A stretch of DNA of 64,000 nt from IMG/VR virus record IMGVR_UViG_3300044625_001067, positions 1-64,000 of that record; one strand, 5' to 3'. Shown here piece after piece: positions 19,982 to 63,612 of this stretch. How positions within the stretch are numbered: position 1 is the first letter of the stretch; each line of letters begins with the position of its first letter. Made by a program: the position numbers and the translations under genes. The notes below the pieces were generated by a model. It worked only from the letters and a program-made list of their open reading frames with translations. It was not told where the DNA came from and made no database searches.

Positions 19982-20476
19982 GCGTGTTGTCCCATATGGG
20001 CGGATAACCGCTTGCTCTGGGACGGTTTACCGGCTAGTTTCTGCGTCGCAGAAACGTTATAGTAAGGGATGGAAAAGTCCCTAAGAAACTCGTCTTAACA
20101 CAATGAAAAACGTCCAACAACCTAATTTCCGCGATCTGTGCTCCAGACTCGCTGACGAGCTGCATAAAGAGACGTGTCTCTACCCCGGTTACGCTAGAGA
20201 GTCGGTGAGAGAGGCTGATAAGGCCCTCAAACAACCTGCTCTTCAGGTGAGCCGTGGGGAAGTATCTTCCCTATACTATGAACACGGTGGTAATGACTGG
20301 TATGAGGGGTTTTCCTGTGAAGACTTCGAGCGTGCTGTAGGCACTCTTCTGGCTCGTCTCGGTTATGTTGTAGTTTAAGAAGACGGATAACCGCCCCTGA
20401 AGTGGGCGGTTTACACCCTTATTCCACTCAGGCGAAACGGTATAGTAAAGGGGTGGAAAACACCGCCCCCAACCCG

Positions 20477-20731: not shown

Positions 20732-22270
20732 GTTCTCACCGATTTCACTCTCTAGTTAACAATCAACCAACTCTTGAGAAAATGGAAAACCTTTCACCTG
20801 CCCCCGACAACACTCTCGACGACCCTTTCACCTCGTACCTTGAAAACGAGCTGCTAAGCTCTGAGGACGAAGGCGACCGAGACAACGAAGATTGCTGAAC
20901 TTTCCCACCCAAACCCACTCTAGGACTGTTACCATCATGAAACCTTCCGAAACCTACTACATTGGAGACCTTGGATACGTTATTCAGGGTGGCGCATGGG
21001 ACGAGGTTTGTAACCTCACCTTCCCCTGTATCGGTGAAGAACGCGAAGGAAGAATCGTGCTCAAGGATGGCCGAGAGCTTTTCATCTTCAGTACAGCTCA
21101 CGGAGACGGCGAGTTCAAGGACCAGTTTGGTAACACCTACGGTGTAGACTCTGGCACACTCGGGGCAATCCGCGTTGAGGATATTCGGGATGACACTCTG
21201 ATCGAGCTAGGGTGTTTTCACACGTTCGACCAACCACTTTCGGACGCTGAATGCTGCAGCGTAGAAGGCGTTGTCACCTTCGGTCACATACACATTGATA
21301 CCGATCCTCTGCAAGATGACGAGGAGGATTACTTGGATGAAGACTGGTACGTCGAAGACGACGAAGACGAAGACGAAGACTGAGCAATATTCCAAGGTAA
21401 GGGGCGGTTTCCCGGCTTGTCTTTCCCTGGAAAAGGCGCTATACTTAGTTCACTCGCCCCTTTCAGCCATGCTCTACGAAGAAAAGTACCCAGACGGACT
21501 GCAAATGAAGCAGTTCAAATGGGTTGCGGGCAATAAGTATAGTCATAACTACTATTTAGGGTTTGACAATGACCTGCTGCTGGCCGAGAGTGACGATGAC
21601 GATACAACTGAGTGGTTCCTGGCCCACAACGAAACCTTCCGATACTTGGGTGAGAGCAAGTGCTCCCGTGGAGAACTTCTCGAACGACACGAACAACCCT
21701 GCACTTGAACTGCCAACTTAAGTCATTTCAACCCTGAAGCAACCCCCCCCCCCCCGAAGCAACACAATGAGCACCATTTTCAGCAACTCCCCCGTAAGAG
21801 TGAATCTTACGAGAGCTCAGATAGAAGCGCTAATCAAGCAGGAGGTTGGGCGGTCCTTACCAAACTTCTCCGCAGATGTAATCTCATTCAAAGTTTCCAC
21901 TCAAACTGATATGAGACGCGAGATTTCTGGAACCACTTTTGAAGGTGTTGATATAGTTCTGAAGCCTTCACATCTCACACCATGGGATCGATGACTAAAA
22001 TCAAGCACTTTTCAAAAGTTGAACTCGACCTTGCCTCTGTCAAAGATGCCGTGATTTCTTCTCTGGAGACTCAGTTTCCGGGGCAGAAAGTTACGAGTAT
22101 TCTCCCTTTGTACTCAAGCCCTGTAGGATACTACGAGGACCGTTTTCCCTCACAGAGGGACTTTTCCGGGTTTGATGTTACTTTGGAGCCTGAGGGTTAA
22201 CCTGAAAGATTTCCTCAGGATCTCCACTAAAGGATCCTCAGACAAGCAAACAAAGCATCGGAGAAGCTCA

Positions 22271-23188
22271 ATGAGCACAGTTGAAGACATCCTCAAGCTG
22301 AAAGAGCAACGCAATGCCGTAATCCTGGCCCACTACTACCAGGTTCCTGAAATTCAAGAAATTGCGGACTTTGTTGGAGACTCGCTTGAGCTCGCTCGCC
22401 AAGCTGCGGGAACCAACGCAGACACGATCGTTTTCTGCGGAGTTCACTTCATGGCCGAAACCGCCAAAGTTCTCAATCCGTTAAAAACCGTTTTACTCCC
22501 GGACATCAACGCCGGTTGCAGCCTGGCTGATGCATGTTTGCCGGAGGACTTTGAAAAGTTTCGTGCTGATAACCCCGACCACTATGTAATTAGCTACATA
22601 AACTGCTCAGCAGCAATCAAGGCTCAGAGCGACCTGATCTGCACCAGCAGCAATGCCGTGCGCCTTGTTGGACAGGTCCCGAAAGACCGACCTATTTTGT
22701 TCGCACCGGACAAAAACTTGGGACGATGGGTCGCTGAGCAGACTGGTCGAGAGCTAACGCTCTGGAACGGAAGTTGCCAAGTCCATGAAGCTTTCAGCGA
22801 AGAGGCTCTCATGGAGCTATGGGTGAAACACCCCGAGAGCGAGGTTATCGCCCACCCTGAGTGCGAAGAGGCTCTGTTAAATCTGGCGGATTTCGTGGGT
22901 TCCACGAGTGCTTTGCTCCGCAGAGTGCAGGAAAGTACGGCGGAGTCCTTCATCGTCCTGACGGAACCAGGAATCATTCACAAAATGAAGCAGGTTGCGC
23001 CGAACAAGGTGTTTCTGCAGGTTCCTGGACGAGACGGTTGTAGCTGCAACGACTGCCCCTGGATGAAATTAAATACCCTGGAAAAAGTGCGGAATTGTCT
23101 GCGGGACTTGACTCCCGAGATTAACCTTGAAGAGGGACTGAGACTGAAAGCTTTGCAACCTCTTGAGCGAATGCTTTCTCTTTCTTAG
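22271..23188 (+). CDS. nadA: quinolinate synthase A
   Basis: 'AVILAHYYQ', 'GDSLEL', '[10 protein letters not shown]', 'AGCSLAD', 'YINCSA', 'AHPEC', 'CPWMK'. Confidence 0.97.
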
Positions 23189-33848: not shown

Positions 33849-34351
33849 CCCCGCGTCTACCCTATAAAACATAAGCAGGGCGGTTTCCCGAACATAAGCA
33901 GGGCGGTTTCCCGGCTTGTTTCTGCTCAGCAGAAACGGTATAGTAAGTTCATGAAAAGCAAAGCCCCGATGATCTACGCCACCGCCGCTCGCTCCCCAAT
34001 CGCGCACATCCTGGGCGGGTCCCAGTTCACCGCAGAACCTTGCGACTCTCCCGCAAAACAGCGGAGGCAGTGGTGGGACGTGTGTGAGCGCCCAGACCAA
34101 GACATTTGCCTTGAGGACGGCGAGTTTCAGCTTTCCGGACCGCACGGCTTCCGCAGAATCGCACGGTTTACAGGGCGAATGCGCTGGGTCAACTCCCACA
34201 CCTGCGCCCCCACAGTCGAAGTCTTCGATGTGGAAACGGTAGTTGCAATGGTTGGTGACCTGCCTGTGATCCTGGGGTGCCGAGGCGAGCGCATCAAGGG
34301 AACCTGGTGGACTCACTGGAATGCTGTGAACCACGATGTTGTTGCCTTGCA

Positions 34352-34816
34352 GTGAAGAACGTGAAAGTTTTCCTTGACGATGAAAGGCCCACGCCAGACG
34401 GCTGGGTCCGTGCCTTCACAGCTCCTGAAGCCATCGATCTTCTTAAAACCGGAAAGGTTACACAACTTTCCCTTGACCACGACCTTGGGCCGGAAGACGC
34501 AGGAACTGGATACGACGTTTGCCTGTGGGTGGAAGAGAAAGTCTTCTCTCAAGACTTTTGTACTGAGGACCCTTTTACACCTCCAATCATGAGTGTGCAT
34601 TCCGCCAACCCTGTTGGCCGGCAACGAATGGAATTTGCTATTCAAATGATTTACCATCACTTCAAGGTTACTCAGCCTGTGGTGTGGGACTCCTTTAAGG
34701 AAACCCTCCAAGAGAAGCGACGTAGCGGGTCCAGAGAAGCCTTAGATGCCCTTGCAAAGCTTGGCCAGGAGTCTAATGATTACGGTGATGATTACGGACC
34801 AACGACGCGAGACTGA
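34352..34816 (+). CDS. cyclic-phosphate-processing receiver-like domain protein
   Basis: 'VFLDDER', 'LSLDHDLG', 'TGYD', 'VHSANPVG'. Confidence 0.8.
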   Translation: MKNVKVFLDDERPTPDGWVRAFTAPEAIDLLKTGKVTQLSLDHDLGPEDAGTGYDVCLWVEEKVFSQDFCTEDPFTPPIMSVHSANPVGRQRMEFAIQMIYHHFKVTQPVVWDSFKETLQEKRRSGSREALDALAKLGQESNDYGDDYGPTTRD

Positions 34817-36714: not shown

Positions 36715-37497
36715 ATGGCACACACTGACACCCTTGGAGACCTTCTTAAGGCTCAAGAACAGGCGGAAGCGGGGCGAAAAGCCGACCCGTTACTCCCCCT
36801 TATGGCACGTATCGACGGTAGCTGCTTCAGTGCTTTCACCAAGGGGCTAGAGCGACCATTTGACGAGCGATTTGTGCAGTTAATGATTGAAACCACCAAG
36901 TTTCTCGTTGACAAGAGTGAAGCCCAACTCGGTTACTGCCAAAGTGATGAAATTACATTGTTCTGGTACCTCGACAAGGAAAATTACTCGAACAGAGAGC
37001 TGTGGTTCGGTGGCAAGTTTCAAAAGCTGACCTCGATCCTGGCCGGCTCCGCATCGTCATACTTTAGTGCGAACATTCCAAAAGTTCTGCATGAAAAGCA
37101 AGGGTGCTATCCCGTGTTTGACGCGAGAGTGTGGAATGTCCCGGACTTAGAACACGCATACCTAAACTTTGTCTGGAGACAACAAGATGCGCAGAAGAAC
37201 TCCGTATCCATGTACGCTCGCCACTTCTTCTCCCACAAGTCTCTTCAGGGCAAAACCTGCCGAGAAATGAAGGGAATGCTTGCCGAAGTCGGAAAGCCAT
37301 GGGAAGAACTCCCTAAGTTTTTCACTCACGGAACGTTCGTGCGAAGGCAGCGCCGTCTTGTCAACCCCGAGGATCTTGTTGGCATTCCCGAGAAGTACCG
37401 CCCGACCAAGGCAATCGTTCGCACTGTTGTTGAAAAGTGGGAGCCTTATGGGGAACTTTCCTTGAGCGACTTTGCTCCTTGGGCTTTTGCTCGGTAA
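36715..37497 (+). CDS. thg1: tRNA(His) guanylyltransferase Thg1-like 3'-5' polymerase
   Basis: 'RIDGSCFSAFT', 'GYCQSDEITL', 'GKFQKLTS', 'FDAR', 'WRQQDAQKNS'. Confidence 0.93.
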   Translation: MAHTDTLGDLLKAQEQAEAGRKADPLLPLMARIDGSCFSAFTKGLERPFDERFVQLMIETTKFLVDKSEAQLGYCQSDEITLFWYLDKENYSNRELWFGGKFQKLTSILAGSASSYFSANIPKVLHEKQGCYPVFDARVWNVPDLEHAYLNFVWRQQDAQKNSVSMYARHFFSHKSLQGKTCREMKGMLAEVGKPWEELPKFFTHGTFVRRQRRLVNPEDLVGIPEKYRPTKAIVRTVVEKWEPYGELSLSDFAPWAFAR

Positions 37498-39008: not shown

Positions 39009-40527
39009 CCCCCGAAAGCCCTAAACCAATGGTAGACCCTGCACAAACTGACTTGTTTACTGCCCCGGTGACTTCAGACTATCAAGTAAAGACCCGCTGG
39101 GGTTTCATGGGGTTCGAGAATCAGTATTGGGATAAGACAAAAATAGGGGAGATAATCACACTTTCCGGACCGCGAGTTGATGTAGATCACAAGAGAAAGA
39201 ATACGTTTAGTGGGTATATTCTTGACCTAGAGTTTCTTACTTGCGAGGATTATAGCAGGGTTCAAGGGGAGTGGACAGCGCCGAAACACATGGATTGCGC
39301 TATTGCAACTATGTGGACTTTTAAGGGAACCGCCGCTAGACGTAAAATGACGACACTACTTAAAAGTGGGCTTGGCATTGGCGTCTCAATTGAGCATGGC
39401 GGTAGAAAGCCTAAAAGAACCATAGGTCCTTGCATAACAGTCACCCATTGCCCCCAAAACCACGATGCATGGGTTATAACTGGAGCCATCGCAGGAAAGT
39501 TCTACAGCAATTTGTATCCAAAGAACAAAACACTTCCGGACTCAGTTTTGAACTGTGCACGGGAGCAATACGAGAAGCACGCTAAACAAGTGTTTCATAC
39601 ACGTGGGAATAGAGATTTCATTCGTGCCCAGCTAGAGTGGGAACCTGGCGGGTCTTACTACAAGTTGTTAAATCCACCCTGTCGAGGGTGAGGTTAGTCG
39701 GGTACGGTCAACCGCACCCCTGAAGGCGGTTACCCGCCTTGCCTTTTCCAGGAAAGTAAGGCATAATTAACGAGAAACTGAACGATGGCCCTCGAACAAT
39801 GAAGTCCACATTTTACGTGAAGAACGAAAAGGTTGAGAGCACAAAAGCTCTCGTTCGCCAACACGCAACTCTAAGATTTCTACAAAACCCTTTACAGGTG
39901 GGTTCCTCAACCGAATTCTGCTTAGAAGGCGATGTCAAAGACTTTAATTCTCTCAACGTTATGCTGGAGGAGCTAAACGTCGAAGAAAAACCAGAACCAG
40001 GGAGCTTTGTTGAACATTTCTGGTCAGTTGTAAGGGGTTCCCCTCGCAATCGCAACCTGTGATTGCCGCAGAAACGGTTAGCCGGCCCCATCCGTTAGGT
40101 CCTTTTTCGGCCTTTGCAAGTAAACACGTCATTCTACTAGCATGGACATTAAGTCACCCTTGACTGACATAGGCTTGCGTAACTTGGCTCACGCACCCCG
40201 TCCCACTGCGGCAAGGGCTCGAAAGCAGATTAGAGAGATTAAAAAAGGGTCCGGCGTGTCTGTGAACGATTGGACGTTTAGAGGTAACATGAAGTACTCT
40301 ATAAACTGCGGAAGTCTAGAAGACACTTCTACAGCCGTATCTTGGCTGAAAGAGAAGAGTATTGCTGTTCTTGAGTGCCCTAAGATACTTGACGCCACAG
40401 CATAGGGCGACGGATGGATTGCTTATTTGGTTAGACCTATAGCGTGAAGGCGGTTTCCTGGCTTGTTTGCTTGGGGGACTCCCTCTGACAACCCTGCGGC
40501 ACTCAAGTCGAATTCTCCCGCCCAACG

Positions 40528-40572
40528 GGGCGGTTACCCGCCCTTTTGCCCCTCGGCGAAACGGGCTATAGT
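40528..40572 (+). promoter_or_regulatory. composite promoter 1 of RNA island
   Basis: GGGCGGTTACCCGCC...TATAGT; no plausible ORF follows. Confidence 0.8.
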
Positions 40573-40600
40573 AAAGGAGTGGTTGAGAGCTTCGCTCCTC

Positions 40601-40785
40601 GCCCCCCTTGCGAAACGAACCTCGAAAAGATCGCGTCTTTGTAAAAGACCTAAGTAGCATACCCCACGAATGTACCTCGTTAGTCGTGCTTGGCGGGTTA
40701 AGCGTAAATGCTTCCGTAAGCTGGGGAAAGGGCTAGGACAAATTGCTACTACAATGACGCAATCTTCGAGACTTCGCCAAGGGGC
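40601..40785 (+). ncRNA. ~185-nt rod-shaped structured RNA of unknown class
   Basis: Nested pairings GCCCC/GGGGC, CTCG/CGAG, AAGAT/ATCTT, GCGTC/GACGC, AGTAGCA/TGCTACT, CCCCA/TGGGG; lies between two promoters. Confidence 0.65.
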
Positions 40786-40787
40786 AA

Positions 40788-40831
40788 GGCGGGAAACCGC
40801 CCTTTACTCCCCTAGCCAAACAAGCTATAGT
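40788..40831 (+). promoter_or_regulatory. composite promoter 2 of RNA island
   Basis: GGCGGGAAACCGCC box, TTTACT, TATAGT 40826-31. Confidence 0.8.
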
Positions 40832-40911
40832 AAAGGGGTGGTTGAGAGAGCTTCGCTCCTCACTCTTTCCCCGGTCTCTCCGGGGGCAACTTGAAAATTT
40901 AAGATTTACAC

Positions 40912-41006
40912 ACACTGGTGAGTACACAGGTTGGGGTACGACCAAGTGCTACCGTGGTCGGGCTTTTACCCTGGTAAGGGGTGAAAGAGTTGGTAGCAGC
41001 CAGTGT
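40912..41006 (+). ncRNA. pseudoknotted multi-stem RNA of unknown class
   Basis: ACACTGG/CCAGTGT closing stem; three internal hairpins; loop TGCTACCG complementary to TGGTAGCA. Confidence 0.55.
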
Positions 41007-41017
41007 TAAGACCAAAA

Positions 41018-41140
41018 GGTTAACGAGAGAGAAAGATCACGGTTCGAGTCCGGATCCAGCAGTAATTGAGCCCGTCAAGGGCATTCCTAGCCATGGTTGC
41101 GGGGTAGTTTAAGTGGCCTAAAAACATTCTCTCTTTTACC
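41018..41140 (+). ncRNA. circularly permuted tRNA-like element 1
   Basis: Order: GAGAGAG, T arm (TTCGAGT), acceptor closed by a linker, TA-GTTT..AAAC D arm, TTCTCTC. Confidence 0.65.
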
Positions 41141-41219
41141 CAGGGGACAATGGCGGTCGCGGCTAACGCCAAGTGCGACTAAGCCACGTCTCATGACCCC
41201 GGTTGATCCCGGGGTATAC

Positions 41220-41293
41220 GCTGCAGTAGGCGAATTGGTTAAGCCGCCAGACTTTCAATCTGGAAATTACGGGTTCAAACCCCGTCTGCAGTA
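41220..41293 (+). tRNA. tRNA-Glu(TTC)
   Basis: GCTGCAG/CTGCAGT; CCAGA-CTTTCAA-TCTGG; ACGGG-TTCAAAC-CCCGT. Confidence 0.9.
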
Positions 41294-41422
41294 TGACCCT
41301 GTGGTTTAACCCATGGGGCACCCTGTGGTTCAACCCGTAGGGCAAATCCACCTTGCCTCTACAGATCGGGAGATAGCATCAAAACGAGTCATCGTGGAAG
41401 AGGGAAGAACTCGGTGGGTTCC

Positions 41423-41548
41423 TGACTAAGAGTGTTAGAGGTTAGCATGTTCCTTTGGGCGAAAACAGTAAGATAGAACGAAGGCCAAGTTCCGTATCTG
41501 TGAGTAGTTTTGACAGAGGAGGTTGAGGTTCGAATCCTCGTTAGTCAC
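41423..41548 (+). ncRNA. tRNA-like RNA with ~50-nt hairpin insertion in the anticodon arm (Gln-like)
   Basis: TGACTAA/TTAGTCA acceptor, D arm, TGAGG-TTCGAAT-CCTCG T arm; extended anticodon arm. Confidence 0.7.
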
Positions 41549-41695
41549 TTGCCCCTCGGCAACAGGGTGCTTCGTTATGCCCTGACCATCAAACATAACG
41601 CCGCTTCTCGTGACGGTAAGATCGAGACTCTGCATCCCTGAGTAACGGGACGCTTAATGTTTGTCGGACAAACATCCTTGGCAACTCAACAGGTT

Positions 41696-41790
41696 AAGAC
41701 GTTGCGAGTCACAGCTGGTAACTGTGACAGGGGACAAGTCTGGTTGACGTTCTGTGCACAAGAACCACGGGTTCGATTCCCGGCGTCTTC
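41696..41790 (+). ncRNA. tRNA-like RNA with extra arm (Cys GCA-like loop)
   Basis: AAGACGT/GCGTCTT; GTCACAG/CTGTGAC hairpin; GTTCT-GTGCACA-AGAAC; CGGG-TTCGATT-CCCG. Confidence 0.6.
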
Positions 41791-41816
41791 GTTGGTTTGC
41801 TTTCGCAAACCCTTAC

Positions 41817-41865
41817 TTCCGCTCTTCTGAGGCCGAAAGCCACGGGGTTCGAATCCCGGCGGAAA
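41817..41865 (+). ncRNA. miniature tRNA-like element (acceptor + T arm, GAAA hairpin)
   Basis: TTCCGC/GCGGAA; GGC-CGAAA-GCC; GGG-TTCGAAT-CCC. Confidence 0.55.
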
Positions 41866-42097
41866 CTGCTCTAAGGGGCAATCACAGGCAAACGCGAGAG
41901 AAATTATGGACAATAGAGCCCGAGGATTTCTCGGATACTCACCCGGCTCCCCTTCGGGTCCCTTCAAGGGATAATTCCTTAGCCTCATAATGTGAGGGTC
42001 CTTTGGGCAACAGTTTCGATTGATCGTAAACCCTCGTTTGGAAAGTGCGGCGCATAACTAAGTCCGTGCGGAAGACAGCAGTGGGTGACCGTCGAAG

Positions 42098-42177
42098 TTG
42101 AAACGGAGCTGGACGCTCGTACTCGTACAGGATGGCCTCTGTGCGAGCAATGCAGGTTCGATCCCTGCCGTTTTAAT
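42098..42177 (+). ncRNA. D-stemless tRNA-like element with long anticodon-position stem
   Basis: TTGAAACG/CGTTTTAA; GCTCGTAC/GTGCGAGC; GCAGG-TTCGATC-CCTGC. Confidence 0.6.
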
Positions 42178-42244
42178 TGCCCAAGATAAACCCACTGGCT
42201 AACCCTGGTACGGTTAATCGCAAGGCAATCCCTCCGGAGGGGAA

Positions 42245-42309
42245 GGTGCGTGGCTTAGTGGTAAAGCTGGTCCGAAAGGCTGAACGCAGGTTCGATTCCT
42301 GCCGCACCA
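42245..42309 (+). ncRNA. tRNA-like element with GAAA tetraloop replacing the anticodon loop
   Basis: GGTGCG/CGCACC; canonical D arm GCTT-AGTGGTA-AAGC; GCAGG-TTCGATT-CCTGC. Confidence 0.7.
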
Positions 42310-42310
42310 C

Positions 42311-42951
42311 TTGGAGTGAGATTCGAGAGTTAGTCGCCTCGATACCCGCAGGGGTATAGCTTAAAGACTCCCTAACAGAGCGCACTCAACCCCAGTTATC
42401 CCACGGCGCTGGTCGCATAGCCGAAGGCACTTCCTGAAGAAGGAACAACTACCGCTGGCGGACCTGGGGCGGTTTGTTGTAAAACAATTGGTATTCAGTA
42501 GCGTCTCGCGAGCAACGCTGATACAACCAGGTCCTGCGACCCTAAGTTAATGCCTCCACGTGGCAGGGTTGGTAACTTTCCCTTTAGGAAAGGCCAAATT
42601 AACAGGGAATTTCTCATCCCGTACGTGAGAAACCTCGACCAAGGTGAGAAGTCAGTCGCTCAGGACACTCTGGGAAAACCTGCCAAGGGTTAATTTGGAC
42701 GGAACTTTCATCCGTTACGTGAAAGCTCTCCTTTGGATTTCGAAGGAATCCGGGGTACTTTGACAGCGATTTGCTCTAAAACCTTCAACAGGTCTGGCAA
42801 TTCGGTGAGTTTGATTCCCGCTTACTCCATTGGATTTTCTCAAATCCGACACCCCCAGAAAAGTTTACTACCTTTGGTAGTGACTATAATGGATGAGTCA
42901 CTGCTCTGCTTGGGCGAAAGCTAAACGGATAACCGGACCGTTCAGCTCCAA
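42311..42951 (+). ncRNA. large ornate structured RNA (~640 nt) with several pseudoknots
   Basis: Terminal stem TTGGAGTGA/TCAGCTCCAA and many long-range complementarities (see findings); no credible ORF. Confidence 0.7.
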
Positions 42952-43208
42952 GTATCAGGTTTCCCCTGGGTTAGCACCCAGGGGTTTAACCCATTCTAGA
43001 AACTGGGATCGTAAGGAAAACGTCGTTAAGTTCCCGTCACTGCCCTGTAAACAGACGTTAACATGGGGTGCTTTCTTGAGGGCTGTCTTGCCGCTGGTAT
43101 CGCTAGATGAAACACTCTTACCGGCCAGTTTGCGAGCCCTGCTGAAAGCTTAGTCCCCTCTGTGCGGCATTGGTTCGCCAAGGCCACGGGATTAGCCTCC
43201 CGTGCTAC

Positions 43209-43284
43209 CCAGGTATCGCCTAACTTGGCTATGGCACCTCTTTCGGGAAGAGGAATAGTCCCGGTTCAAATCCGGGTGCCTGGA
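43209..43284 (+). tRNA. tRNA-Pro(CGG)
   Basis: CCAGGTA/TGCCTGG; CCTCT-TTCGGGA-AGAGG; CCCGG-TTCAAAT-CCGGG. Confidence 0.9.
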
Positions 43285-43355
43285 TGTCCCACTAACGTGG
43301 GAGCAAGGAAACTTGATAACTAAGTAACTATTCTGTCGCAAATGCGATAGCATTT

Positions 43356-43429
43356 GGGGTCTTAGCTCATTTTGGTAGAGCATCTCTGTGGCACGGAGAA
43401 GGTGACCGGTTCGATCCCGGTAGATTCCA
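43356..43429 (+). tRNA. tRNA-Ala(GGC)
   Basis: GGGGTCT/AGATTCC with G3:U70; loop GTGGCAC. Confidence 0.92.
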
Positions 43430-43457
43430 CTTTGTGGGCAACCACAAACTAGAGCAA

Positions 43458-43531
43458 GGGCTTACATGTACCAAGGCTGGCGAGATTGCTTTGCAAGCAA
43501 ACTGTGAAGAGTTCGATTCTCTTTGGGTCCA
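43458..43531 (+). tRNA. tRNA-Ala(TGC), atypical D arm
   Basis: GGGCTTA/TGGGTCC with G3:U70; loop TTTGCAA; AAGAG-TTCGATT-CTCTT. Confidence 0.75.
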
Positions 43532-43552
43532 CTTTCGCTAACGCGAAAACAC

Positions 43553-43668
43553 GAGGGAGAAATGCCGGTTCAAGTCCGGCTCTGGGGGTCCTATAACGTG
43601 GGGTCCTGGGTAGTTTAACTGGTGCCAAGGACTTGTTATCAGTACGCACAAGTCCAAAAACTTCTTTC
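43553..43668 (+). ncRNA. circularly permuted tRNA-like element 2, with hairpin inserted in the D loop
   Basis: GAGGGAG, GCCGG-TTCAAGT-CCGGC, closed acceptor hairpin, TA-GTTT-AACTGGT..[GGACTTGT/ACAAGTCC]..AAAC, TTCTTTC. Confidence 0.7.
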
Positions 43669-43674
43669 CCACAA

Positions 43675-43747
43675 CCCCTCATAGTGTAGCGGCCAAGCAC
43701 GCACCTCTGTCTAAGGTGTATCACGGGTTCAAATCCCGTTGAGGGGG
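43675..43747 (+). tRNA. tRNA-Asp(GTC)
   Basis: CCCCTCA/TGAGGGG; CACCT-CTGTCTA-AGGTG; G73. Confidence 0.92.
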
Positions 43748-43783
43748 TTATTCCGAGGGGTGGCCACCCCAATGACGAATAAA

Positions 43784-43843
43784 GCCAGAGTCCCTGGATA
43801 GGGAAGAGTCGCGACAACGGGGTTCGAATCCCCAGCTCTGGTG
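43784..43843 (+). ncRNA. tRNA-like element lacking an anticodon arm
   Basis: GCCAGAG/CTCTGGT; CCCT-GGAT-AGGG; stub GTCGCGAC; GGGG-TTCGAAT-CCCC. Confidence 0.6.
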
Positions 43844-43860
43844 TTGACGCCCTGGATTGA

Positions 43861-43925
43861 GCGGTTAACCGTTTGCTCCGGGACGGTTTCCCGCCCTTTC
43901 ACCTTTCTGCGAAACGGGTTATAGT
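43861..43925 (+). promoter_or_regulatory. composite promoter 3 of RNA island
   Basis: GCGGTTAACCG and ACGGTTTCCCG boxes, TATAGT 43920-25. Confidence 0.8.
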
Positions 43926-44070
43926 AAAAGGGTGGTTACGGGAGTTTCACTCTCGGCCCCGAACGCTGCGGTTAGGTCTCTGCGTTAGTGAGACTGGCAG
44001 GAGCCCGCCTCCCAGGGCGATGCTTAAGAGCTAGACCCCTTTCTCTGGTTCCCGGAGAAAGATTCCCCGA

Positions 44071-44120
44071 TCCAACTGGTGGTTTGCCTCCGGCAAAGCA
44101 GGTTCGAGTCCTGCCTTGGA
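44071..44120 (+). ncRNA. miniature tRNA-like element
   Basis: TCCAA/TTGGA; CTGGTGG D-loop remnant; TTTGCC/GGCAAA; GCAGG-TTCGAGT-CCTGC. Confidence 0.5.
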
Positions 44121-44213
44121 AATTGGTGCGAAGATCCCTAAGTCTTTATGCCATCTCGTCTCAGAATCCAGCTGTTTGCTTAGGGGCGAACGATCTCTGG
44201 TGAAAAGAGCGAG

Positions 44214-44287
44214 TCTCTCATCGACTAATTGGTAATGTCACCGCCGGGTTACTGGTGGGAATCCAGGTTCGAACCCTGGTGAGAGTG
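44214..44287 (+). tRNA. tRNA-Asn(GTT)-like with 8-nt anticodon loop lacking U33
   Basis: CTCTCA/TGAGAG; CCGCC-GGGTTACT-GGTGG; CCAGG-TTCGAAC-CCTGG; G73. Confidence 0.7.
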
Positions 44288-44316
44288 TTTGCTCTAGTGT
44301 GCTAGAGTGATTAAAA

Positions 44317-44390
44317 GCCCGAGTAACCCAGCGGAAGAGGTGCCTGACTTAAAATCAGGAAGTCGTAGGGTTCGAATCCCACCTCGGGTA
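44317..44390 (+). tRNA. tRNA-Leu(TAA), short variable loop
   Basis: GCCCGAG/CTCGGGT; CCTGA-CTTAAAA-TCAGG; A73. Confidence 0.88.
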
Positions 44391-44441
44391 TTGCTCCTTT
44401 GACCTGGGCCTGGAAGCTCAGTGAATAAGGAACAAACAATC

Positions 44442-44516
44442 GCGTATGTACCCCAACCGGAAGAGGGGCAACACTGAGACTGTTGTTATGTGGAGGTTCG
44501 ACCCCTCTCATGCGCA
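44442..44516 (+). tRNA. tRNA-Leu(GAG), short variable loop
   Basis: GCGTATG/CATGCGC; CAACA-CTGAGAC-TGTTG. Confidence 0.85.
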
Positions 44517-44589
44517 TTTTCCTTTTACCACCCTTCACATAGTGGCGGTAGCTTGGAAAGAACCCTGCGGTTGAAAACCATGGGCAAAA

Positions 44590-44660
44590 TCTCGAATCGA
44601 CTAGTGGTAGGTCGCCTGTCTCTGAAACAGGAAACTTTGGTTCGAATCCAAATTTGAGAA
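44590..44660 (+). tRNA. tRNA-Gln(CTG)
   Basis: TCTCGAA/TTTGAGA; CCTGT-CTCTGAA-ACAGG. Confidence 0.9.
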
Positions 44661-44715
44661 TAACGTTTGGGGCACATCTATGTGCCCTTGCGTACGTTTC
44701 TCGTAGAGAAACCTT

Positions 44716-44804
44716 GGAAGAGTGGTCGAGTGGCTGATGACGATTGCTTGGAAAGCAATTGAGGCGCAAAAGCGTCTCCGGAGGTTCGAATCCTCTCTCT
44801 TCCG
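44716..44804 (+). tRNA. tRNA-Ser(GGA)
   Basis: GGAAGAG/CTCTTCC; loop TTGGAAA; long variable arm; G73. Confidence 0.95.
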
Positions 44805-44862
44805 TCTCACCTGAAAGTAGTACAGCAATAGGGTAAATTATAGGAGTCAATACGTATTTACC

Positions 44863-45564
44863 ATGTCGCTAGGATACTTCTCAGACGAGGTAGTTGAGTG
44901 GCTGTACGAGAACTACTCGGAGTTGGCCGGCAGTATTCTCTACGAATTTACAACGTGCCAGCGACCCAACGGAACTGTATACGGCACGGCAGGAACTTGT
45001 CGAAAAGGTTCCGAGATAGAACAACGGCGCCAGGAGTCAATAACTCACCTGAACACTACCCTGGCTTCCTTAAGGAACAAGCGTGATAACTCACCCGAAG
45101 AGAGCAGGAGCAGGATAAATAGATTGATCACCAAGCTGGAAACGGACCTAAAGGCTATTCAGGGTGTTAAGGGGGCGGAAAAGAAAAGTACGGGGGTCGG
45201 TAGTAGAGCAACGGGTCAGGACCCTATTCGAAATCCCGTGGATCATTCTGCGATGACGCCTGAAAAGACTCAAAATGAGACGTATGGGTTTTACGGTACT
45301 ACTCGAGATGCGAAACCCAAGGAAGTGGAAAAGCGCTGGCGTCACGCATCACGAGCGATTCAGTCTCAAGGGGTGCTTCCGATACACGCACGACGCCTGC
45401 TCGACGCGTCGTGGGGTAGGCATTTGGCAAATGAGCTGGGGAAGACACCAACTGACAAGGTATGGAAGACGGTTCAAGAAATGCTTGAGAAACGTGATTC
45501 ACCAGAACGAAGAGACTTCCTGAAGATTTTGAGGATGGTCACAAGAGAGGACTACGAAGACTGA
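44863..45564 (+). CDS. hypothetical protein with N-terminal 'CQRPNGTVYGTAGTCRKG' motif
   Basis: 233-aa ORF preceded by GGGTAAA motif; last plus-strand gene before the strand switch. Confidence 0.7.
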   Translation: MSLGYFSDEVVEWLYENYSELAGSILYEFTTCQRPNGTVYGTAGTCRKGSEIEQRRQESITHLNTTLASLRNKRDNSPEESRSRINRLITKLETDLKAIQGVKGAEKKSTGVGSRATGQDPIRNPVDHSAMTPEKTQNETYGFYGTTRDAKPKEVEKRWRHASRAIQSQGVLPIHARRLLDASWGRHLANELGKTPTDKVWKTVQEMLEKRDSPERRDFLKILRMVTREDYED

Positions 45565-55057: not shown

Positions 55058-55147
55058 TTGTCACCGTGGTGGGCCACTCCTGTGTCGTTCACCGGATATG
55101 ACCTGTGGGTGTGTTCTTTAACGAGTTTTCGAGGACTTGAAACTAAG

Positions 55148-55236
55148 TAGGCGTGTAGGGAGTCGAACCCTAACTAGCCGGTAATCTGCCGGAGAGGACT
55201 GTATAAGGGTCCCTGTGCACCGTACACCACACGCCC
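55148..55236 (-). tRNA. tRNA-Ile(TAT) with long variable arm
   Basis: GGGCGTG/CACGCCT; loop CTTATAC; V arm CCGG-CAGATTA-CCGG; TAGGG-TTCGACT-CCCTA. Confidence 0.8.
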
Positions 55237-59853: not shown

Positions 59854-59965
59854 TGGGACCGGCAGGACTCGAACCTGCAACCGCGCCTTTAAAAGAGGTA
59901 ATTTAATTGCTGATGTATCTTTGTCAAGATAACTTTTCGTGCTCTACCAGTTGAGCTACGGTCCC
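59854..59965 (-). tRNA. tRNA-Lys(TTT) with 39-nt insertion in the anticodon stem
   Basis: GGGACCG/CGGTCCC; CG[39 nt]CCT-CTTTTAA-AGGCG; GCAGG-TTCGAGT-CCTGC. Confidence 0.8.
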
Positions 59966-60696: not shown

Positions 60697-60746
60697 TAGA
60701 TAGTTGTTTTTCCCAAGAGAGTTAGGGTAAATCGCTGAACTATCTA
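60697..60746 (-). ncRNA. hairpin with TCAGC/AAAAACA internal-loop motif
   Basis: TAGATAGT-TCAGCGA...AAAAACA-ACTATCTA. Confidence 0.65.
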
Positions 60747-60764
60747 TGTTTGCCGAAGGCAAAG

Positions 60765-60886
60765 TCGAAGAGGCAAGATTCGAACTTGCGTATGGCGGTT
60801 CCTTTTGCGTATTGGGTAATTGCTGAATTACCTAAGCTAGGTAATCTTTTTGCATTACCACTGCCTAACCACTTGGCTACTCTTCG
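60765..60886 (-). ncRNA. tRNA scaffold whose anticodon loop is replaced by an AAAAAG-hairpin-TCAGCAATT module
   Basis: CGAAGAG/CTCTTCG; GCC-AAGTGGTTA-GGC; GTGGT/ACCGC; GCAAG-TTCGAAT-CTTGC. Confidence 0.8.
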
Positions 60887-61759: not shown

Positions 61760-62137
61760 TCACTTGGTTGACCTTGCATACAAATTCGACAGTAGCAGAA
61801 GCAGAATGAGTGACAAAATGGACACAGAGCCTAAGATTACGATTGGGCTAAACACTGAGAGCCATGGCCAGGTTATTTGCCCCGTTAATTTCAACCCGAG
61901 GAGGAGACCCTGGGCTGTCATTAACGAAACTGCGAGATTCTCAAACATTAGTTATTTCTCATGCGAAAGTAGTTGAAGAATCATCCAAAGGGCTCCCAAC
62001 CCAAGTAGAAAAATTGGCACAAGGGTTGGTGAAAGCACTGTGAGCCAGGGCCAGGAAACCTGACCCGTTACTTTCATAGTCATGAATACGGTTTGCAGAA
62101 CGATGCAGAGGGCACCCGGCAATTTGATCCAGATCAT
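61760..62137 (-). CDS. two tandem paralogous small membrane proteins (61952-62137 and 61760-61948)
   Basis: 'KVTGQVSWPWLTVLSP' vs 'KLTGQITWPWLSVFSP'; first overlaps the DUF2828 stop. Confidence 0.7.
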
Positions 62138-63612
62138 GCTCCTTCAGCAAATACGGCACCGACAGCGTCGTACCTTTCAGTGTAAACAGCGTCACGCATA
62201 GCCCCTACAGGCGTAATTACCCCGCCAGTAAGCACAGCTTTCAGGATTGAAGGGCTGCACCCGGAGACCAGGCAAGTTCCCGTGTCGTGCATTTTCATAG
62301 GTACGTTGCCGCTAGAGTTAACATTCCAGAAGACAAGTTCCGGCAAGGAATACCCAGCTTGAGCGTACTTGATTCGCACCGCCTCAAAGTTTGTCACTGA
62401 GTTGTTTCTGCAGCAGGAATCAAACTGCATGTCTGAGACAATGATGAGCTTGCGCGGCATTTCCCCCTCAGGAATATGGTTCATCGTGGCGGTAGCCAAC
62501 ACAAGATTGAAGACTGCTTGCAGGTCTGTATTCGCACCCCAGTCGGCCCGGCTAAGGTTACGAACACGCTCAGCAACGTTTCTCCCTGTAACCGACTGCA
62601 ACTGCGGTCTTCCGGAGAAGGTTAGGAACTTATCCTTCCATGCCCCGGTGTTACGCTCAGCGATGTACATCGCCAGCGAGATTGAAACCGCCATGGGCAT
62701 GCCGCCGTTATTTCCCATTGATCCTGAGACGTCGGCAATTACCAGGCCGTTCAGCTGCTCTCCTTCCATGTAGTTGGGTAGAGCCTCCCACATTAAGTTT
62801 AGAGTCTGATCGCTCCTCTCACCCCCGTAAAGGTACTTGTGCACGATCTCGTAAGGGTAGATCGTACCGGCATTGATTTTTGCCTCACCTTTCTCTACCG
62901 AGTCAAGGTAGGATTGGTAGCGGTCGCCGTCGCGCTTGGCGAAAGCTTTACGATACATGAAGCCTGCCCGAGAAGGCAACTTGCTATAGTCAATGCTTTC
63001 CCACTCACGGGCACACATTGGCTGCTCAACAATCTTGACTTGTGACCTGAGGGCAGTCAGTGCCTTGCGGTACTGCCTCTCGGTCCAACCCATTGCTTCG
63101 GCAATTTTTCGGCCAATCCTCTTAGAGTCCTGGCTGGAAGCGTTAATGGAAGGCAGCCACTTTGCCAGAAGTGAAACTGACTTTCCAACTTCCGTATTTA
63201 GGTCGGCGTTCAGTTGTGCCTTAATTGCTTCGAGTGCGATGCCCCAAACTAAGGTACCGTCAAGGGCTACCACATCATCCCAGCGACCGTACTGTGGAAT
63301 CAGGCTAACTAGCCTGGCACCAATTGCAGCATCATTTCGAACCAGCTCCTTGAAAACTTCTCGAAAGATCTTTCGCTCTCCCTGGCCCCCACGAATGTCG
63401 CGTGCCCAAAACAAGATTCGAGTTGCGGTCTCAGGGTCTTCTGCGTAGGCAAGGTTGAACAGTCGAGTTGCTTCGCTGATTTTGTCACGGCAAGCTGCAA
63501 TCTTTCCAAAAAGGTCCAGGCACTTAGACTCGGTGGACTTGTATGCCTTTGCACCGTTTGCAGTGGTAGTTTGGTTAAACTCGTTTTCGAGTGCGTTTAA
63601 AAAGGTTGTCAT
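62134..63612 (-). CDS. DUF2828 family protein (TROVE/Ro60-like helical domain + vWA)
   Basis: 'TANGA...ST..CLDLF', 'RDIRGGQGER', 'YGRWDD', 'AKWLPS', MIDAS 'DVSGSM', 'SDMQFD', 'VFWNV', 'VSGCSP'. Confidence 0.88.
   Translation of the reverse strand: MTTFLNALENEFNQTTTANGAKAYKSTESKCLDLFGKIAACRDKISEATRLFNLAYAEDPETATRILFWARDIRGGQGERKIFREVFKELVRNDAAIGARLVSLIPQYGRWDDVVALDGTLVWGIALEAIKAQLNADLNTEVGKSVSLLAKWLPSINASSQDSKRIGRKIAEAMGWTERQYRKALTALRSQVKIVEQPMCAREWESIDYSKLPSRAGFMYRKAFAKRDGDRYQSYLDSVEKGEAKINAGTIYPYEIVHKYLYGGERSDQTLNLMWEALPNYMEGEQLNGLVIADVSGSMGNNGGMPMAVSISLAMYIAERNTGAWKDKFLTFSGRPQLQSVTGRNVAERVRNLSRADWGANTDLQAVFNLVLATATMNHIPEGEMPRKLIIVSDMQFDSCCRNNSVTNFEAVRIKYAQAGYSLPELVFWNVNSSGNVPMKMHDTGTCLVSGCSPSILKAVLTGGVITPVGAMRDAVYTERYDAVGAVFAEGA

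What the first reader, a model, noticed from the sequence alone, without database searches (positions are those of the whole stretch)
40579..44804. A 4.2-kb protein-free RNA island with three dedicated promoters
Seen: no credible CDS. Ten near-canonical tRNAs are interleaved with at least nine T-arm-containing non-canonical elements, a 640-nt RNA, a 185-nt rod and many spacer hairpins. Each non-canonical element keeps the TTCRANY T loop and an acceptor-like stem while the anticodon arm is deleted, replaced, opened or extended. That bias is not what random decay would give. Inference: selection on the tRNA elbow/acceptor, either as processing punctuation that releases neighbouring ncRNAs or as decoys against host tRNA-targeting defences.
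Basis: partly seen in the sequence, partly recalled or inferred. Interest (0 to 1): 0.85.

Follow-up and report, generated by a model that had tools for sequence, protein, structure and literature searches.

The report
Cyanophage tRNA island with tRNA-derived RNAs
A 4.3-kb gene-free stretch of an uncultured jumbo cyanophage carries eight ordinary tRNA genes mixed with about a dozen tRNA-shaped RNAs that cannot decode, several of them conserved in related phages, so the phage appears to reuse the tRNA body as a chassis for other small RNAs.

Summary
Window 40.5-44.8 kb has no credible CDS. It has 17 strict T-arm motifs, all on the + strand, against 0.19 expected by chance. Eight are in canonical tRNAs and at least eleven elements are non-canonical. 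Three copies of a 59-nt terminator-plus-promoter module divide the island into three transcription units.

Related viral contigs show that several odd elements are conserved and covary:
- A (41025-41136) is a circularly permuted tRNA-like RNA, 87-96% identical in four other contigs, with 5 compensatory pairs. A2 is a paralogue.
- B (41423-41548) is a cloverleaf whose anticodon arm is a 73-nt conserved rod.
- C is a tRNA-like element without a D arm.
- E carries a conserved 52-nt trailer hairpin, S1.
- L is the counterpart of a relative's tRNA-Ser, with the anticodon loop replaced by a tetraloop.

None of these matches an Rfam family, including YrlA. A probable HDV-like self-cleaving ribozyme lies at 42538-42603. 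The "185-nt rod" and "640-nt RNA" have no comparative support.

Best reading: these are tRNA-derived ncRNAs that keep the acceptor/T-arm helix as a handle for processing and stability. The permuted type resembles Y RNA, and tRNA-repair genes lie nearby. The decoy idea is not excluded, and some unconserved elements may be decaying tRNAs. This is a new variant of a known kind.

The parts
40526..40584 (+). Module P1: GC hairpin plus U-run (terminator of the upstream unit), weak -35, -10 TATAGT at 40567-40572, conserved AAAGGAGTGGTT
   Evidence: Repeat family D1; exact core match; alignment of all copies
40579..40808 (+).
   Evidence: z = -2.62; the structure is not conserved in L038, where only the leader hairpin and terminator are shared
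40785..40843 (+). Module P2 (terminator hairpin, TTTACT-17-TATAGT); start of the 3.1-kb unit 2
41025..41136 (+). Element A: circularly permuted tRNA-like RNA. It has a 9-bp GA-rich closing stem, a T-arm, a capped acceptor-like arm (hairpin GCCC-GUCAR-GGGC) and a D-like arm (GGGGUAGUUUAAGUGG)
   Evidence: 87-96% identical in L031, L038, L025 and L029; 95.7% of cells paired and 5 compensatory pairs; covariance model R1; no Rfam hit
41220..41293 (+). tRNA-Glu(UUC), canonical
41296..41343 (+). Two tandem copies of a 24-nt spacer hairpin (ACCCUGUGGUUUAACCCAUGGGGC); further copies at 42976 and 44562
   Evidence: Repeat family D3
41423..41548 (+). Element B: cloverleaf with acceptor, D-arm and T-arm, in which a 73-nt three-segment arm with a nearly invariant sequence replaces the anticodon loop
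   Evidence: 88% identical in L038 and L044; 40 consensus pairs, 4 compensatory; model R2 finds only these three copies
41610..41728 (+). Conserved spacer hairpins upstream of C, including GUCACAG-CUGGUAA-CUGUGAC
   Evidence: Aligned with L031; 3 compensatory pairs in the hairpin
41730..41791 (+). Element C: tRNA-like element without a D arm, with a 7-nt anticodon-type loop (GCA here, GUA in L031)
   Evidence: the proximal acceptor pairing and the T stem are kept through changes between the window and L031, read from the alignment
41819..41867 (+). Element D: mini element with a 6-bp acceptor-like stem, a small GGC-CGAAA-GCC hairpin and a T-arm
   Evidence: no homologue found
42099..42176 (+). 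Element E: cloverleaf with a 10-bp 'anticodon' stem and a 6-nt loop
   Evidence: the T-arm and acceptor 3' strand are conserved in L037 and L038, while the middle has diverged
42177..42228 (+). S1: conserved 52-nt three-helix hairpin that always lies directly 3' of a tRNA-like acceptor end
   Evidence: 85-89% identical in L037, L038 and L044; in L044 it follows B instead of E
42244..42310 (+). Element F: tRNA body with normal acceptor, D and T arms, but the anticodon arm replaced by a short GAAA-capped hairpin
   Evidence: Rfam tRNA 40.4 bits; fold; not called by ARAGORN at default settings
42312..42830 (+).
   Evidence: z = -2.6 for 42311-43208; only 42752-42819 has a 75% match, in L038
42538..42603 (+). 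Probable HDV-like self-cleaving ribozyme: G1.U, P1 GACCCU/AGGGUU, P2 GUUAAU/AUUAAC, P3 GCC/GGC, P1.1 CC/GG, P4 CUUUCC/GGAAAG, and a C in J4/2. Predicted cut is 5' of G42538
   Evidence: RF02682 at 25.6 bits, E 0.019 in 911 nt; my own descriptor gives 1 hit in the window against 0.017 expected per 128 kb, and 0 hits in 2.9 Mb of other loci
43209..43430 (+). tRNA-Pro(CGG) 43209-43284 and tRNA-Ala(GGC) 43356-43430, both canonical
43458..43532 (+). Element H: tRNA-Ala(UGC)-like, with G3.U70 and the anticodon loop intact but a degenerate D-arm and a G.U-rich acceptor
   Evidence: 17.4 bits; relaxed ARAGORN; 43464-43532 is 87% identical to tRNA-Ala of Pseudomonas phage VCM
43552..43672 (+). Element A2: second permuted tRNA-like RNA (closing stem, T-arm, capped 6-bp acceptor stem, D-like UAGUUUAACUGG, extra hairpin)
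   Evidence: Paralogue in the phage's other tRNA island (L013 880-982, minus strand); 22 pairs, 4 compensatory; R1 scores the L013 copy at 20.4 bits
43675..43747 (+). tRNA-Asp(GUC), canonical
43785..43842 (+). Element J: 58 nt with a 7-bp acceptor stem, a D-like hairpin, a 15-nt linker in place of the anticodon arm, and a T-arm
   Evidence: no homologue found
43879..43937 (+). Module P3 (terminator hairpin, TTCACC-16-TATAGT); start of unit 3
44038..44127 (+). Element K: T-arm at 44098 with an uncertain acceptor pairing
   Evidence: no homologue found
44214..44287 (+). Element L: tRNA body whose anticodon arm is a 7-bp stem capped by a GUUA tetraloop
   Evidence: it is the positional counterpart of tRNA-Ser(UGA) in L037 (8807-8888), with two compensatory changes in the acceptor stem
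44317..44806 (+). tRNA-Leu(UAA), tRNA-Leu(GAG), tRNA-Gln(CUG) and tRNA-Ser(GGA), all canonical

Best explanation
The island is a set of three sigma70-type transcription units of an uncultured T4-like jumbo cyanophage. They co-express ordinary tRNAs with a repertoire of tRNA-derived non-coding RNAs.

In these RNAs the acceptor/T-arm helix is retained, usually with a D-like elbow partner. That part is what RNase P, the 3' processing nucleases, the CCA-adding enzyme and T-loop modification enzymes recognise, so it ensures excision from the polycistronic precursor and stability. The anticodon domain, freed from decoding, has been replaced by other modules:
- a conserved 73-nt rod (B);
- a capped hairpin (E, F, L);
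- a linker (J);
- an open terminal helix in the circularly permuted type (A, A2).

So the tRNA body is a maturation and stability chassis for small RNAs, and those RNAs are the selected products. The permuted A/A2 type has the topology of bacterial YrlA-type Y RNAs. It most likely works as a protein-binding tRNA mimic in the phage's tRNA/RNA repair or quality-control set: a Thg1-like enzyme, a cREC-domain protein and a 'Ro-like' DUF2828 protein are encoded nearby. Processing is supplemented by conserved trailer hairpins (S1) and probably by one HDV-like self-cleaving ribozyme.

Shown: the elements exist, they are all on one strand, and several are conserved with covariation. Inferred: processing by tRNA enzymes, the chassis role, and any protein partner.
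For: - 17 T-arms on one strand against 0.19 expected.
- No coding signal in the island.
- A is 87-96% conserved across four other contigs, with 5 compensatory pairs, and is more conserved than the adjacent tRNA-Glu.
- B: the acceptor covaries, while the insert replacing the anticodon loop is nearly invariant in three phages whose shared coding regions are 64-79% identical in DNA.
- Model R2, built from B, also picks up ordinary tRNAs through its scaffold.
- A2 and its paralogue covary in the T stem, acceptor stem and extra hairpin.
- L corresponds to a tRNA-Ser of a relative; the acceptor covaries and a neat tetraloop stem replaces the anticodon loop.
- S1 always abuts a tRNA-like 3' end, even when the upstream element differs.
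- Extra T-arms outside called tRNAs recur in relatives' islands: 8 in L037, 8 in L038, 7 in L042.
- Neighbourhood: Thg1-like PF04446 at 89 bits and cREC_REC. Homologues of the DUF2828 protein are annotated 'Ro-like RNA binding protein' in mycobacteriophages, and a tRNA-like RNA lies downstream of it (2.2 kb here, about 0.4 kb in phage B3).
- Precedent: YrlA RNAs have the T, acceptor-stem-loop, D order, and one is cut by RNase P and receives CCA (PMC4201824).
Against: - There is no expression or end-mapping data.
- Only 2-4 distinct sequences are available per element, so covariation is suggestive and not statistically strong.
- A and A2 fail three of the four tested YrlA criteria (no Rfam hit, no GNCGAA motif, not next to the Ro-like gene).
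- The DUF2828 protein shows no sequence match to solved Ro60 structures. The link to TROVE rests on one Atlas row and on database annotation.
- D, G, H, J and K have no homologue in any locus searched, so for them selection is not shown.
- The functions of the modules are unknown.
Confidence: 0.45

Rival explanations
1. Decoys. The anticodon-less tRNA bodies bind and titrate host tRNA-directed defence factors (anticodon nucleases, acceptor-end toxins) or other tRNA-binding proteins. They cannot be inactivated by anticodon-loop cleavage, so they protect the real tRNA pool.
For: The neighbourhood is rich in tRNA repair functions (Thg1-like, cREC), which suggests that tRNA damage is a selective pressure on these phages. 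The elements keep the tRNA shape but lack cleavable anticodon loops. They recur in relatives.
Against: It does not explain why the non-tRNA inserts (the B rod, the capped hairpin and linker of A, S1) are the most conserved parts. Most known anticodon nucleases recognise the anticodon loop that these RNAs lack (general knowledge, not tested). No defence system or target is identified here.
Confidence: 0.2
2. Turnover debris. The tRNA array gains and loses genes quickly, and the odd elements are pseudogenes at various stages of decay. The apparent retention of T-arms arises because only remnants that still have a T loop are noticed.
For: tRNA content and order differ greatly between relatives. 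D, G, H, J and K have no detectable homologue. H and L look like recently altered tRNAs. Ascertainment through the T loop is real.
Against: A, A2, B, C and E+S1 are conserved, all but E+S1 with compensatory changes, and A and B more strongly than neighbouring true tRNAs. The replaced arms are well-formed helices and not eroded ones.
Confidence: 0.2
3. Unusual but working tRNAs. Some elements still decode, or at least are aminoacylated: C (no D arm, 7-nt loop with U33) and H (Ala identity pair G3.U70 with a UGC anticodon). They would serve translation or act as amino-acid donors.
For: C and H keep a 7-nt anticodon-type loop. H keeps G3.U70, read directly from the sequence. Armless tRNAs are known in mitochondria (general knowledge).
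Against: This applies to two elements at most. C has a pyrimidine at position 37, and its anticodon differs between relatives (GCA against GUA). A, B, E, F, J and L have no anticodon loop at all.
Confidence: 0.1

Closest known systems
YrlA-type bacterial and phage Y RNAs (Chen et al. 2014, PMC4201824; Rfam RF02553)
   Same: A and A2 have the same topology: the 5' and 3' ends form a stem, followed by a T-arm, a capped acceptor-like stem-loop and a D-like arm. YrlA RNAs are also encoded by phages. This phage encodes a protein whose homologues are annotated 'Ro-like'.
   Different: No RF02553 hit even at E <= 10 in a 181-nt search. No GNCGAAN0-1G motif. A/A2 sit 21 kb from the Ro-like gene on the other strand, inside a tRNA operon, and in several copies per genome. 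The protein is DUF2828/DUF7788, not a recognised TROVE protein.
Small stable RNAs C and D of the phage T4 tRNA cluster (from my own knowledge; no paper retrieved)
   Same: Non-tRNA stable RNAs co-transcribed with tRNAs in a T4-like phage and matured by tRNA-processing enzymes; their function is still unknown.
   Different: No sequence relation was tested. Here there are about a dozen elements of several architectures, including permuted ones.
Two-piece (permuted) tmRNA of cyanobacteria (Rfam RF01851, RF04321)
   Same: The permuted order is the same: T-arm, acceptor 3' strand, linker, acceptor 5' strand. A genuine permuted tmRNA lies in the homologous island of relative L038 (81 and 84 bits).
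   Different: A/A2 have no messenger-like domain, no pseudoknots and no G3.U70, and no tmRNA family matches in the window.
HDV-like 'theta' ribozymes next to tRNAs in gut phages (PMC10879173)
   Same: An HDV-type double-pseudoknot fold with a J4/2 cytosine, inside a phage tRNA array.
   Different: It is below the Rfam gathering score (25.6 against 44). It is not directly 3' of a tRNA. It has a full 6-bp P4. It is in a cyanophage, whereas theta ribozymes were reported only from gut Caudoviricetes. It is not conserved in the relatives available.
Engineered tRNA scaffolds and tRNA-like processing handles such as mascRNA (from my own knowledge)
   Same: An arbitrary RNA placed in the anticodon position of a tRNA body gains correct processing and stability. 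B, E, F and L have exactly this layout.
   Different: These are natural and phage-encoded, and their processing has not been tested.

Membership tests
Canonical tRNA (Rfam RF00005 / ARAGORN) | Cloverleaf scoring at or above the gathering score (29 bits) or called by ARAGORN at default settings | tested here: not met
   Met by the 8 canonical genes and by F (40.4 bits). Not met by A, A2, B, C, D, E, G, J, K and L; H scores 17.4 bits.
Canonical tRNA (Rfam RF00005 / ARAGORN) | 5-bp anticodon stem with a 7-nt loop and U33 | tested here: not met
   Absent in A, A2, B, D, E, F, J and L. Present in C and H only.
YrlA Y RNA (RF02553) | Stem formed by the 5' and 3' ends, then T, acceptor-like and D stem-loops in that order | tested here: met
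   A: 29 pairs, 95.7% paired, 5 compensatory. A2.
YrlA Y RNA (RF02553) | Match to the Rfam covariance model at the gathering score (69 bits) | tested here: not met
   No hit at E <= 10 in the 5.2-kb or the 181-nt search. The 26-27 bit hits in L037 overlap tRNA pairs.
YrlA Y RNA (RF02553) | GNCGAAN0-1G motif near the 5' end (presumed Ro60 contact) | tested here: not met
   Not present in the 5' strand of A or A2 in any of the aligned sequences. Motif definition from PMC4201824.
YrlA Y RNA (RF02553) | Encoded within 4 kb of a Ro60/TROVE gene on the same strand | tested here: not met
   The only Ro-like candidate (DUF2828, 62134-63612) is on the - strand, 17-21 kb away.
YrlA Y RNA (RF02553) | Bound by Ro60/Rsr | not testable with these tools
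   Needs co-immunoprecipitation or an in vitro binding assay.
Two-piece tmRNA | Tag reading frame and pseudoknots, Ala identity pair G3.U70, and a match to RF01851 or RF04321 | tested here: not met
   No tmRNA hit in the window. The acceptor of A is UGCGGGG/UCCAGCA, without G3.U70.
HDV-like ribozyme (RF02682; theta subclass) | Nested double pseudoknot P1-P1.1-P2-P3-P4 with G1.U and a cytosine at the start of J4/2 | tested here: met
   All helices are present at 42538-42603. The descriptor gives 1 hit against 0.017 expected per 128 kb, and 0 in 2.9 Mb. The descriptor was written after seeing the site.
HDV-like ribozyme (RF02682; theta subclass) | Score at or above the Rfam gathering score (44 bits) | tested here: not met
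   25.6 bits, E 0.019-0.11.
HDV-like ribozyme (RF02682; theta subclass) | Lies immediately 3' of a tRNA (theta definition); self-cleaves | tested here: not met
   The upstream sequence is a 74-nt hairpin, not a tRNA. Self-cleavage cannot be tested with these tools.
Sigma70-type promoter plus intrinsic terminator | -35 and -10 hexamers 16-18 nt apart; GC hairpin followed by a U-run | tested here: inconclusive
   -10 TATAGT is invariant. The -35 hexamers are weak here (TTTACT, TTCACC; 9 of 12) but TTGACA-17-TATAGT is present in relative L016. The generic scan is not enriched over shuffles. Conservation before tRNA arrays in relatives is the main support.

The most novel reading that the evidence does not exclude
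Jumbo cyanophages encode a previously undescribed family of circularly permuted tRNA mimics (A/A2), together with tRNA-scaffolded effector RNAs (B, E+S1). These act as RNA cofactors or decoys of a phage tRNA repair and anti-defence module (Thg1-like enzyme, cREC protein, Ro-like DUF2828 protein). This would be a phage counterpart of Ro-Y RNA particles, built into tRNA operons and matured partly by an HDV-like ribozyme.
Probability: 0.2. Interest if true: 0.8.

Novelty: new variant of a known kind. Interest (0 to 1): 0.62.

Why it matters
Phage tRNA clusters are usually read as codon-usage or anti-defence supplements, and anything a tRNA finder rejects is ignored or labelled 'pseudo'. Here several rejected elements are conserved and covary, and two of them are more conserved than the neighbouring real tRNA.

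This points to a class of tRNA-derived regulatory or cofactor RNAs in large cyanophages, including a permuted tRNA mimic that is absent from Rfam. It yields concrete covariance models for searching viromes. It provides a candidate natural 'tRNA scaffold' system. It also suggests that HDV-like ribozymes occur in tRNA arrays beyond gut phages. Finally, it offers candidate RNA partners for the widespread but uncharacterised DUF2828 'Ro-like' phage proteins and for phage Thg1-like enzymes.

Tried and rejected
- **Stop-codon recoding as the reason for missing ORFs.** No single reassignment gives long ORFs.
- **Hidden small proteins.** No significant family hits, and non-coding codon usage.
- **Known RNA families for the odd elements.** Rfam at E <= 10 gives only chance-level hits apart from tRNA and the HDV-like match. 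There is no YrlA, tmRNA, group I intron, GOLLD/ROOL, hammerhead or twister.
- **Cultured relatives.** Megablast against phage records found nothing. Sensitive blastn found only individual tRNAs. The flanking proteins have no useful phage homologues.
- **Relatives found through the flanking genes.** These were identical copies of the same virus and so uninformative.
- **More copies of A and B.**
  - A metagenome scan for A's capped hairpin added one true sequence.
  - A bacterial-genome scan for B's core gave only chance matches.
  - Models R1 and R2 searched over 1.4 Mb of 76 sources (the window and 75 loci) found no further members.
- **A as the junction of two degenerate tRNAs** (the false-positive type noted in PMC4201824). 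Rejected because the closing stem covaries and no flanking tRNA halves exist.
- **B as an intron-containing tRNA-Ser** (ARAGORN -i). Rejected because the insert is a conserved paired rod with no anticodon loop.
- **The rod.** 42995-43208 is no better than shuffles. 40579-40810 is not conserved in L038.
- **DUF2828 as a Ro60 relative.** Not detectable by sequence against solved structures.
- **Literature on T4 RNAs C and D.** Searches returned nothing usable.

Full report
**Source and setting.** The window is positions 1-64000 of IMGVR_UViG_3300044625_001067, a 277-kb viral contig. This follows from identical loci and matching coordinates. Its closest cultured relatives are the 244-kb T4-like Synechococcus phages B3 and B23 (Kyanoviridae); the DUF2828 protein is 62.8% identical. 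No cultured phage matches the island beyond single tRNAs.

**Observation: coding.** Between 40.4 and 44.86 kb no + strand ORF exceeds 86 aa. Ten island ORFs have no significant Pfam or PHROG match. Their codon-usage log-likelihood is -0.12 to +0.03 per codon, against +0.06 to +0.20 for flanking small genes. Recoding of a stop codon does not help.

**Observation: tRNAs.** ARAGORN finds 8 tRNAs. Rfam adds 42244-42310.

**Observation: T-arms.** A strict T-arm motif (5-bp stem, TTCRANY loop) occurs 17 times on the + strand and never on the - strand. Chance expectation is 0.19, with a maximum of 4 in 2000 simulations. Nine of the 17 lie outside called tRNAs. Relaxed ARAGORN, an acceptor-stem search and folding define the non-canonical elements A, A2, B, C, D, E, F, H, J, K and L, plus a weak G.

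**Promoter modules.** A 59-nt module occurs at 40526, 40785 and 43879. It consists of a GC hairpin with a U-run, a weak -35, TATAGT, a conserved AAARGRGTGGTT, and a leader hairpin.
- The same module precedes the phage's second tRNA island (L013) and the tRNA arrays of other contigs (L016, L031, L038).
- In L016 the -35 is a perfect TTGACA with a 17-nt spacer.
- A 2-mismatch copy at 20441 precedes coding sequence, so the module is a promoter class and not a tRNA-only device.
- The layout implies three units: an RNA of about 230 nt, a 3.1-kb unit and a 0.9-kb unit.

**Finding relatives.** The gene at 36715-37497 is a Thg1-like protein (PF04446, 89 bits). It is syntenic with tRNA islands. A profile of five orthologues retrieved 71 viral loci. 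Islands are present in L037, L038, L042, L043, L044 and L045, and in pattern-derived L025, L029 and L031. tRNA content and order are very plastic between them. Extra T-arms outside called tRNAs recur: 8 in L037, 8 in L038 and 7 in L042.

**Element A (41025-41136).**
- It is 96%, 94% and 87% identical in L031, L038 and L025/L029. The adjacent tRNA-Glu is 69-76% identical.
- Its structure is a 9-bp GA-rich closing stem, a 7-bp T-arm, an acceptor-like stem capped by a linker holding the invariant GCCC-GUCAR-GGGC hairpin, and a D-like arm.
- On four distinct sequences 95.7% of cells pair. Five pairs change on both sides, and the covariation score exceeds all 500 shuffles and all slid controls.
- This is a circular permutation of the cloverleaf, in which the terminal helix takes the place of the anticodon stem.

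**Element A2 (43552-43672).** A2 and its paralogue in the second island (L013) share this plan, with 4 compensatory pairs. No Rfam family matches A, not even in a 181-nt search. Model R1 finds no further members in 1.4 Mb.

**Element B (41423-41548).**
- B has a 7-bp acceptor stem, a D-arm and a T-arm. A 73-nt three-segment arm stands where the anticodon loop should be.
- Across three phages the acceptor stem and the rod show 4 compensatory pairs, while the rod sequence is almost invariant.
- Model R2 recovers only these three copies, plus ordinary tRNAs through the scaffold.
- No bacterial genome carries B.

**Elements C, E, S1, F and L.**
- C (41730-41791) is tRNA-like without a D arm. It is shared with L031. 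The proximal acceptor pairing and the T stem are kept through changes, and upstream hairpins covary.
- E (42099-42176) keeps the T-arm and acceptor, but its middle has diverged from the L037/L038 version.
- The 52-nt hairpin S1 (42177-42228) that follows E is 85-89% conserved in three relatives. In L044 it follows B instead.
- F has a GAAA-capped stub in place of the anticodon arm.
- L is the positional counterpart of tRNA-Ser(UGA) in L037. The acceptor covaries, and a 7-bp stem with a tetraloop replaces the anticodon loop.

**Elements without homologues.** D, G, H, J and K have no homologue in any locus searched.

**Large RNA and ribozyme.** 42311-43208 folds better than shuffles (z = -2.6, 20 shuffles), with a predicted closed domain at 42312-42830. 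No homologue exists apart from 42752-42819.

Within that domain, 42538-42603 matches the HDV ribozyme family RF02682 at 25.6 bits, against a gathering score of 44. Inspection adds what the model does not score:
- a 6-bp P2 pseudoknot (GUUAAU/AUUAAC);
- P1.1 (CC/GG);
- a G1.U start of P1;
- the J4/2 cytosine.

A descriptor of these features hits once in the window. The expectation is 0.017 per 128 kb, and there are no hits in 2.9 Mb of other loci. The descriptor was written after seeing the site. I rate this a probable ribozyme that cuts 5' of G42538. It differs from the theta ribozymes of gut phages in position and in P4.

**Interpretation.** However, the most conserved parts are often the non-tRNA modules. 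This argues that the tRNA body is a processing and stability handle, and that the modules are what selection acts on.

A/A2 share their topology with YrlA Y RNAs, one of which is cut by RNase P and receives CCA (PMC4201824). They fail the other YrlA criteria. The genomic neighbourhood is suggestive:
- a Thg1-like enzyme and a cREC-domain protein;
- a DUF2828/DUF7788 protein whose mycobacteriophage homologues are annotated 'Ro-like RNA binding protein';
- a 112-nt tRNA-like RNA downstream of that gene, 2.2 kb away here and about 0.4 kb away in phage B3;
- a genuine permuted cyanobacterial tmRNA in the island of L038.

Decoy function is not excluded, and for the unconserved elements neither is neutral decay. 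None of this has expression evidence.

Noticed in passing
window 59854-59965 (-) and 62134-63612 (-): A 492-aa DUF2828/DUF7788 protein has mycobacteriophage homologues annotated 'Ro-like RNA binding protein'. About 2.2 kb downstream lies a 112-nt tRNA-like RNA with normal acceptor, D and T arms and about 55 nt in place of the anticodon arm. The same pairing occurs in Synechococcus phage B3, where the RNA lies about 0.4 kb downstream and is annotated 'tRNA-Pseudo-GCA'.
   Followed up: partly
window 60740-60870 (-): Another perfect T-arm (GCAAG-UUCGAAU-CUUGC) that is not part of any called tRNA lies between the DUF2828 gene and the 112-nt tRNA-like RNA. No clear acceptor stem appears in the minimum-energy fold.
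   Followed up: partly
window 36715-37497 (+): A Thg1-like (tRNA-His guanylyltransferase family) gene. Relatives are found in 71 viral contigs, and in at least six of them it lies just upstream of a tRNA island.
   Followed up: partly
window 34277-34816 (+): A protein with a cREC_REC 'cyclic-phosphate processing receiver' domain. This is of note because an HDV-like ribozyme would leave a 2',3'-cyclic phosphate end.
   Followed up: no
L038 20239-20471 (IMGVR_UViG_3300014050_000058): A phage-encoded permuted (two-piece) cyanobacterial-type tmRNA lies inside the homologous RNA island (RF01851 at 81 bits, RF04321 at 84 bits). None is found in the window.
   Followed up: partly
window 20441-20458 (+): A fourth copy (2 mismatches) of the tRNA-island promoter core, with its upstream GC hairpin, lies in front of protein-coding sequence.
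   Followed up: no
window 55147-55236 (-): ARAGORN calls a 90-nt tRNA-Ile(UAU) with a long extra arm. Rfam did not report it at the gathering score.
   Followed up: partly
window 22172-23188 (+) and 44863-45564 (+): Quinolinate synthase NadA (PF02445, 396 bits). In addition, the gene just downstream of the island has an N-terminus that weakly matches a cyanophage NMN adenylyltransferase. Together these suggest auxiliary NAD metabolism genes.
   Followed up: no
window 42580-42740 (+): Two similar hairpins (UUUCUCA-UCCCGUACG-UGAGAAA and CUUUCA-UCCGUUACG-UGAAAG), each preceded by a UUAA-rich stretch, suggest an internal duplication of about 100 nt just after the ribozyme candidate.
   Followed up: no
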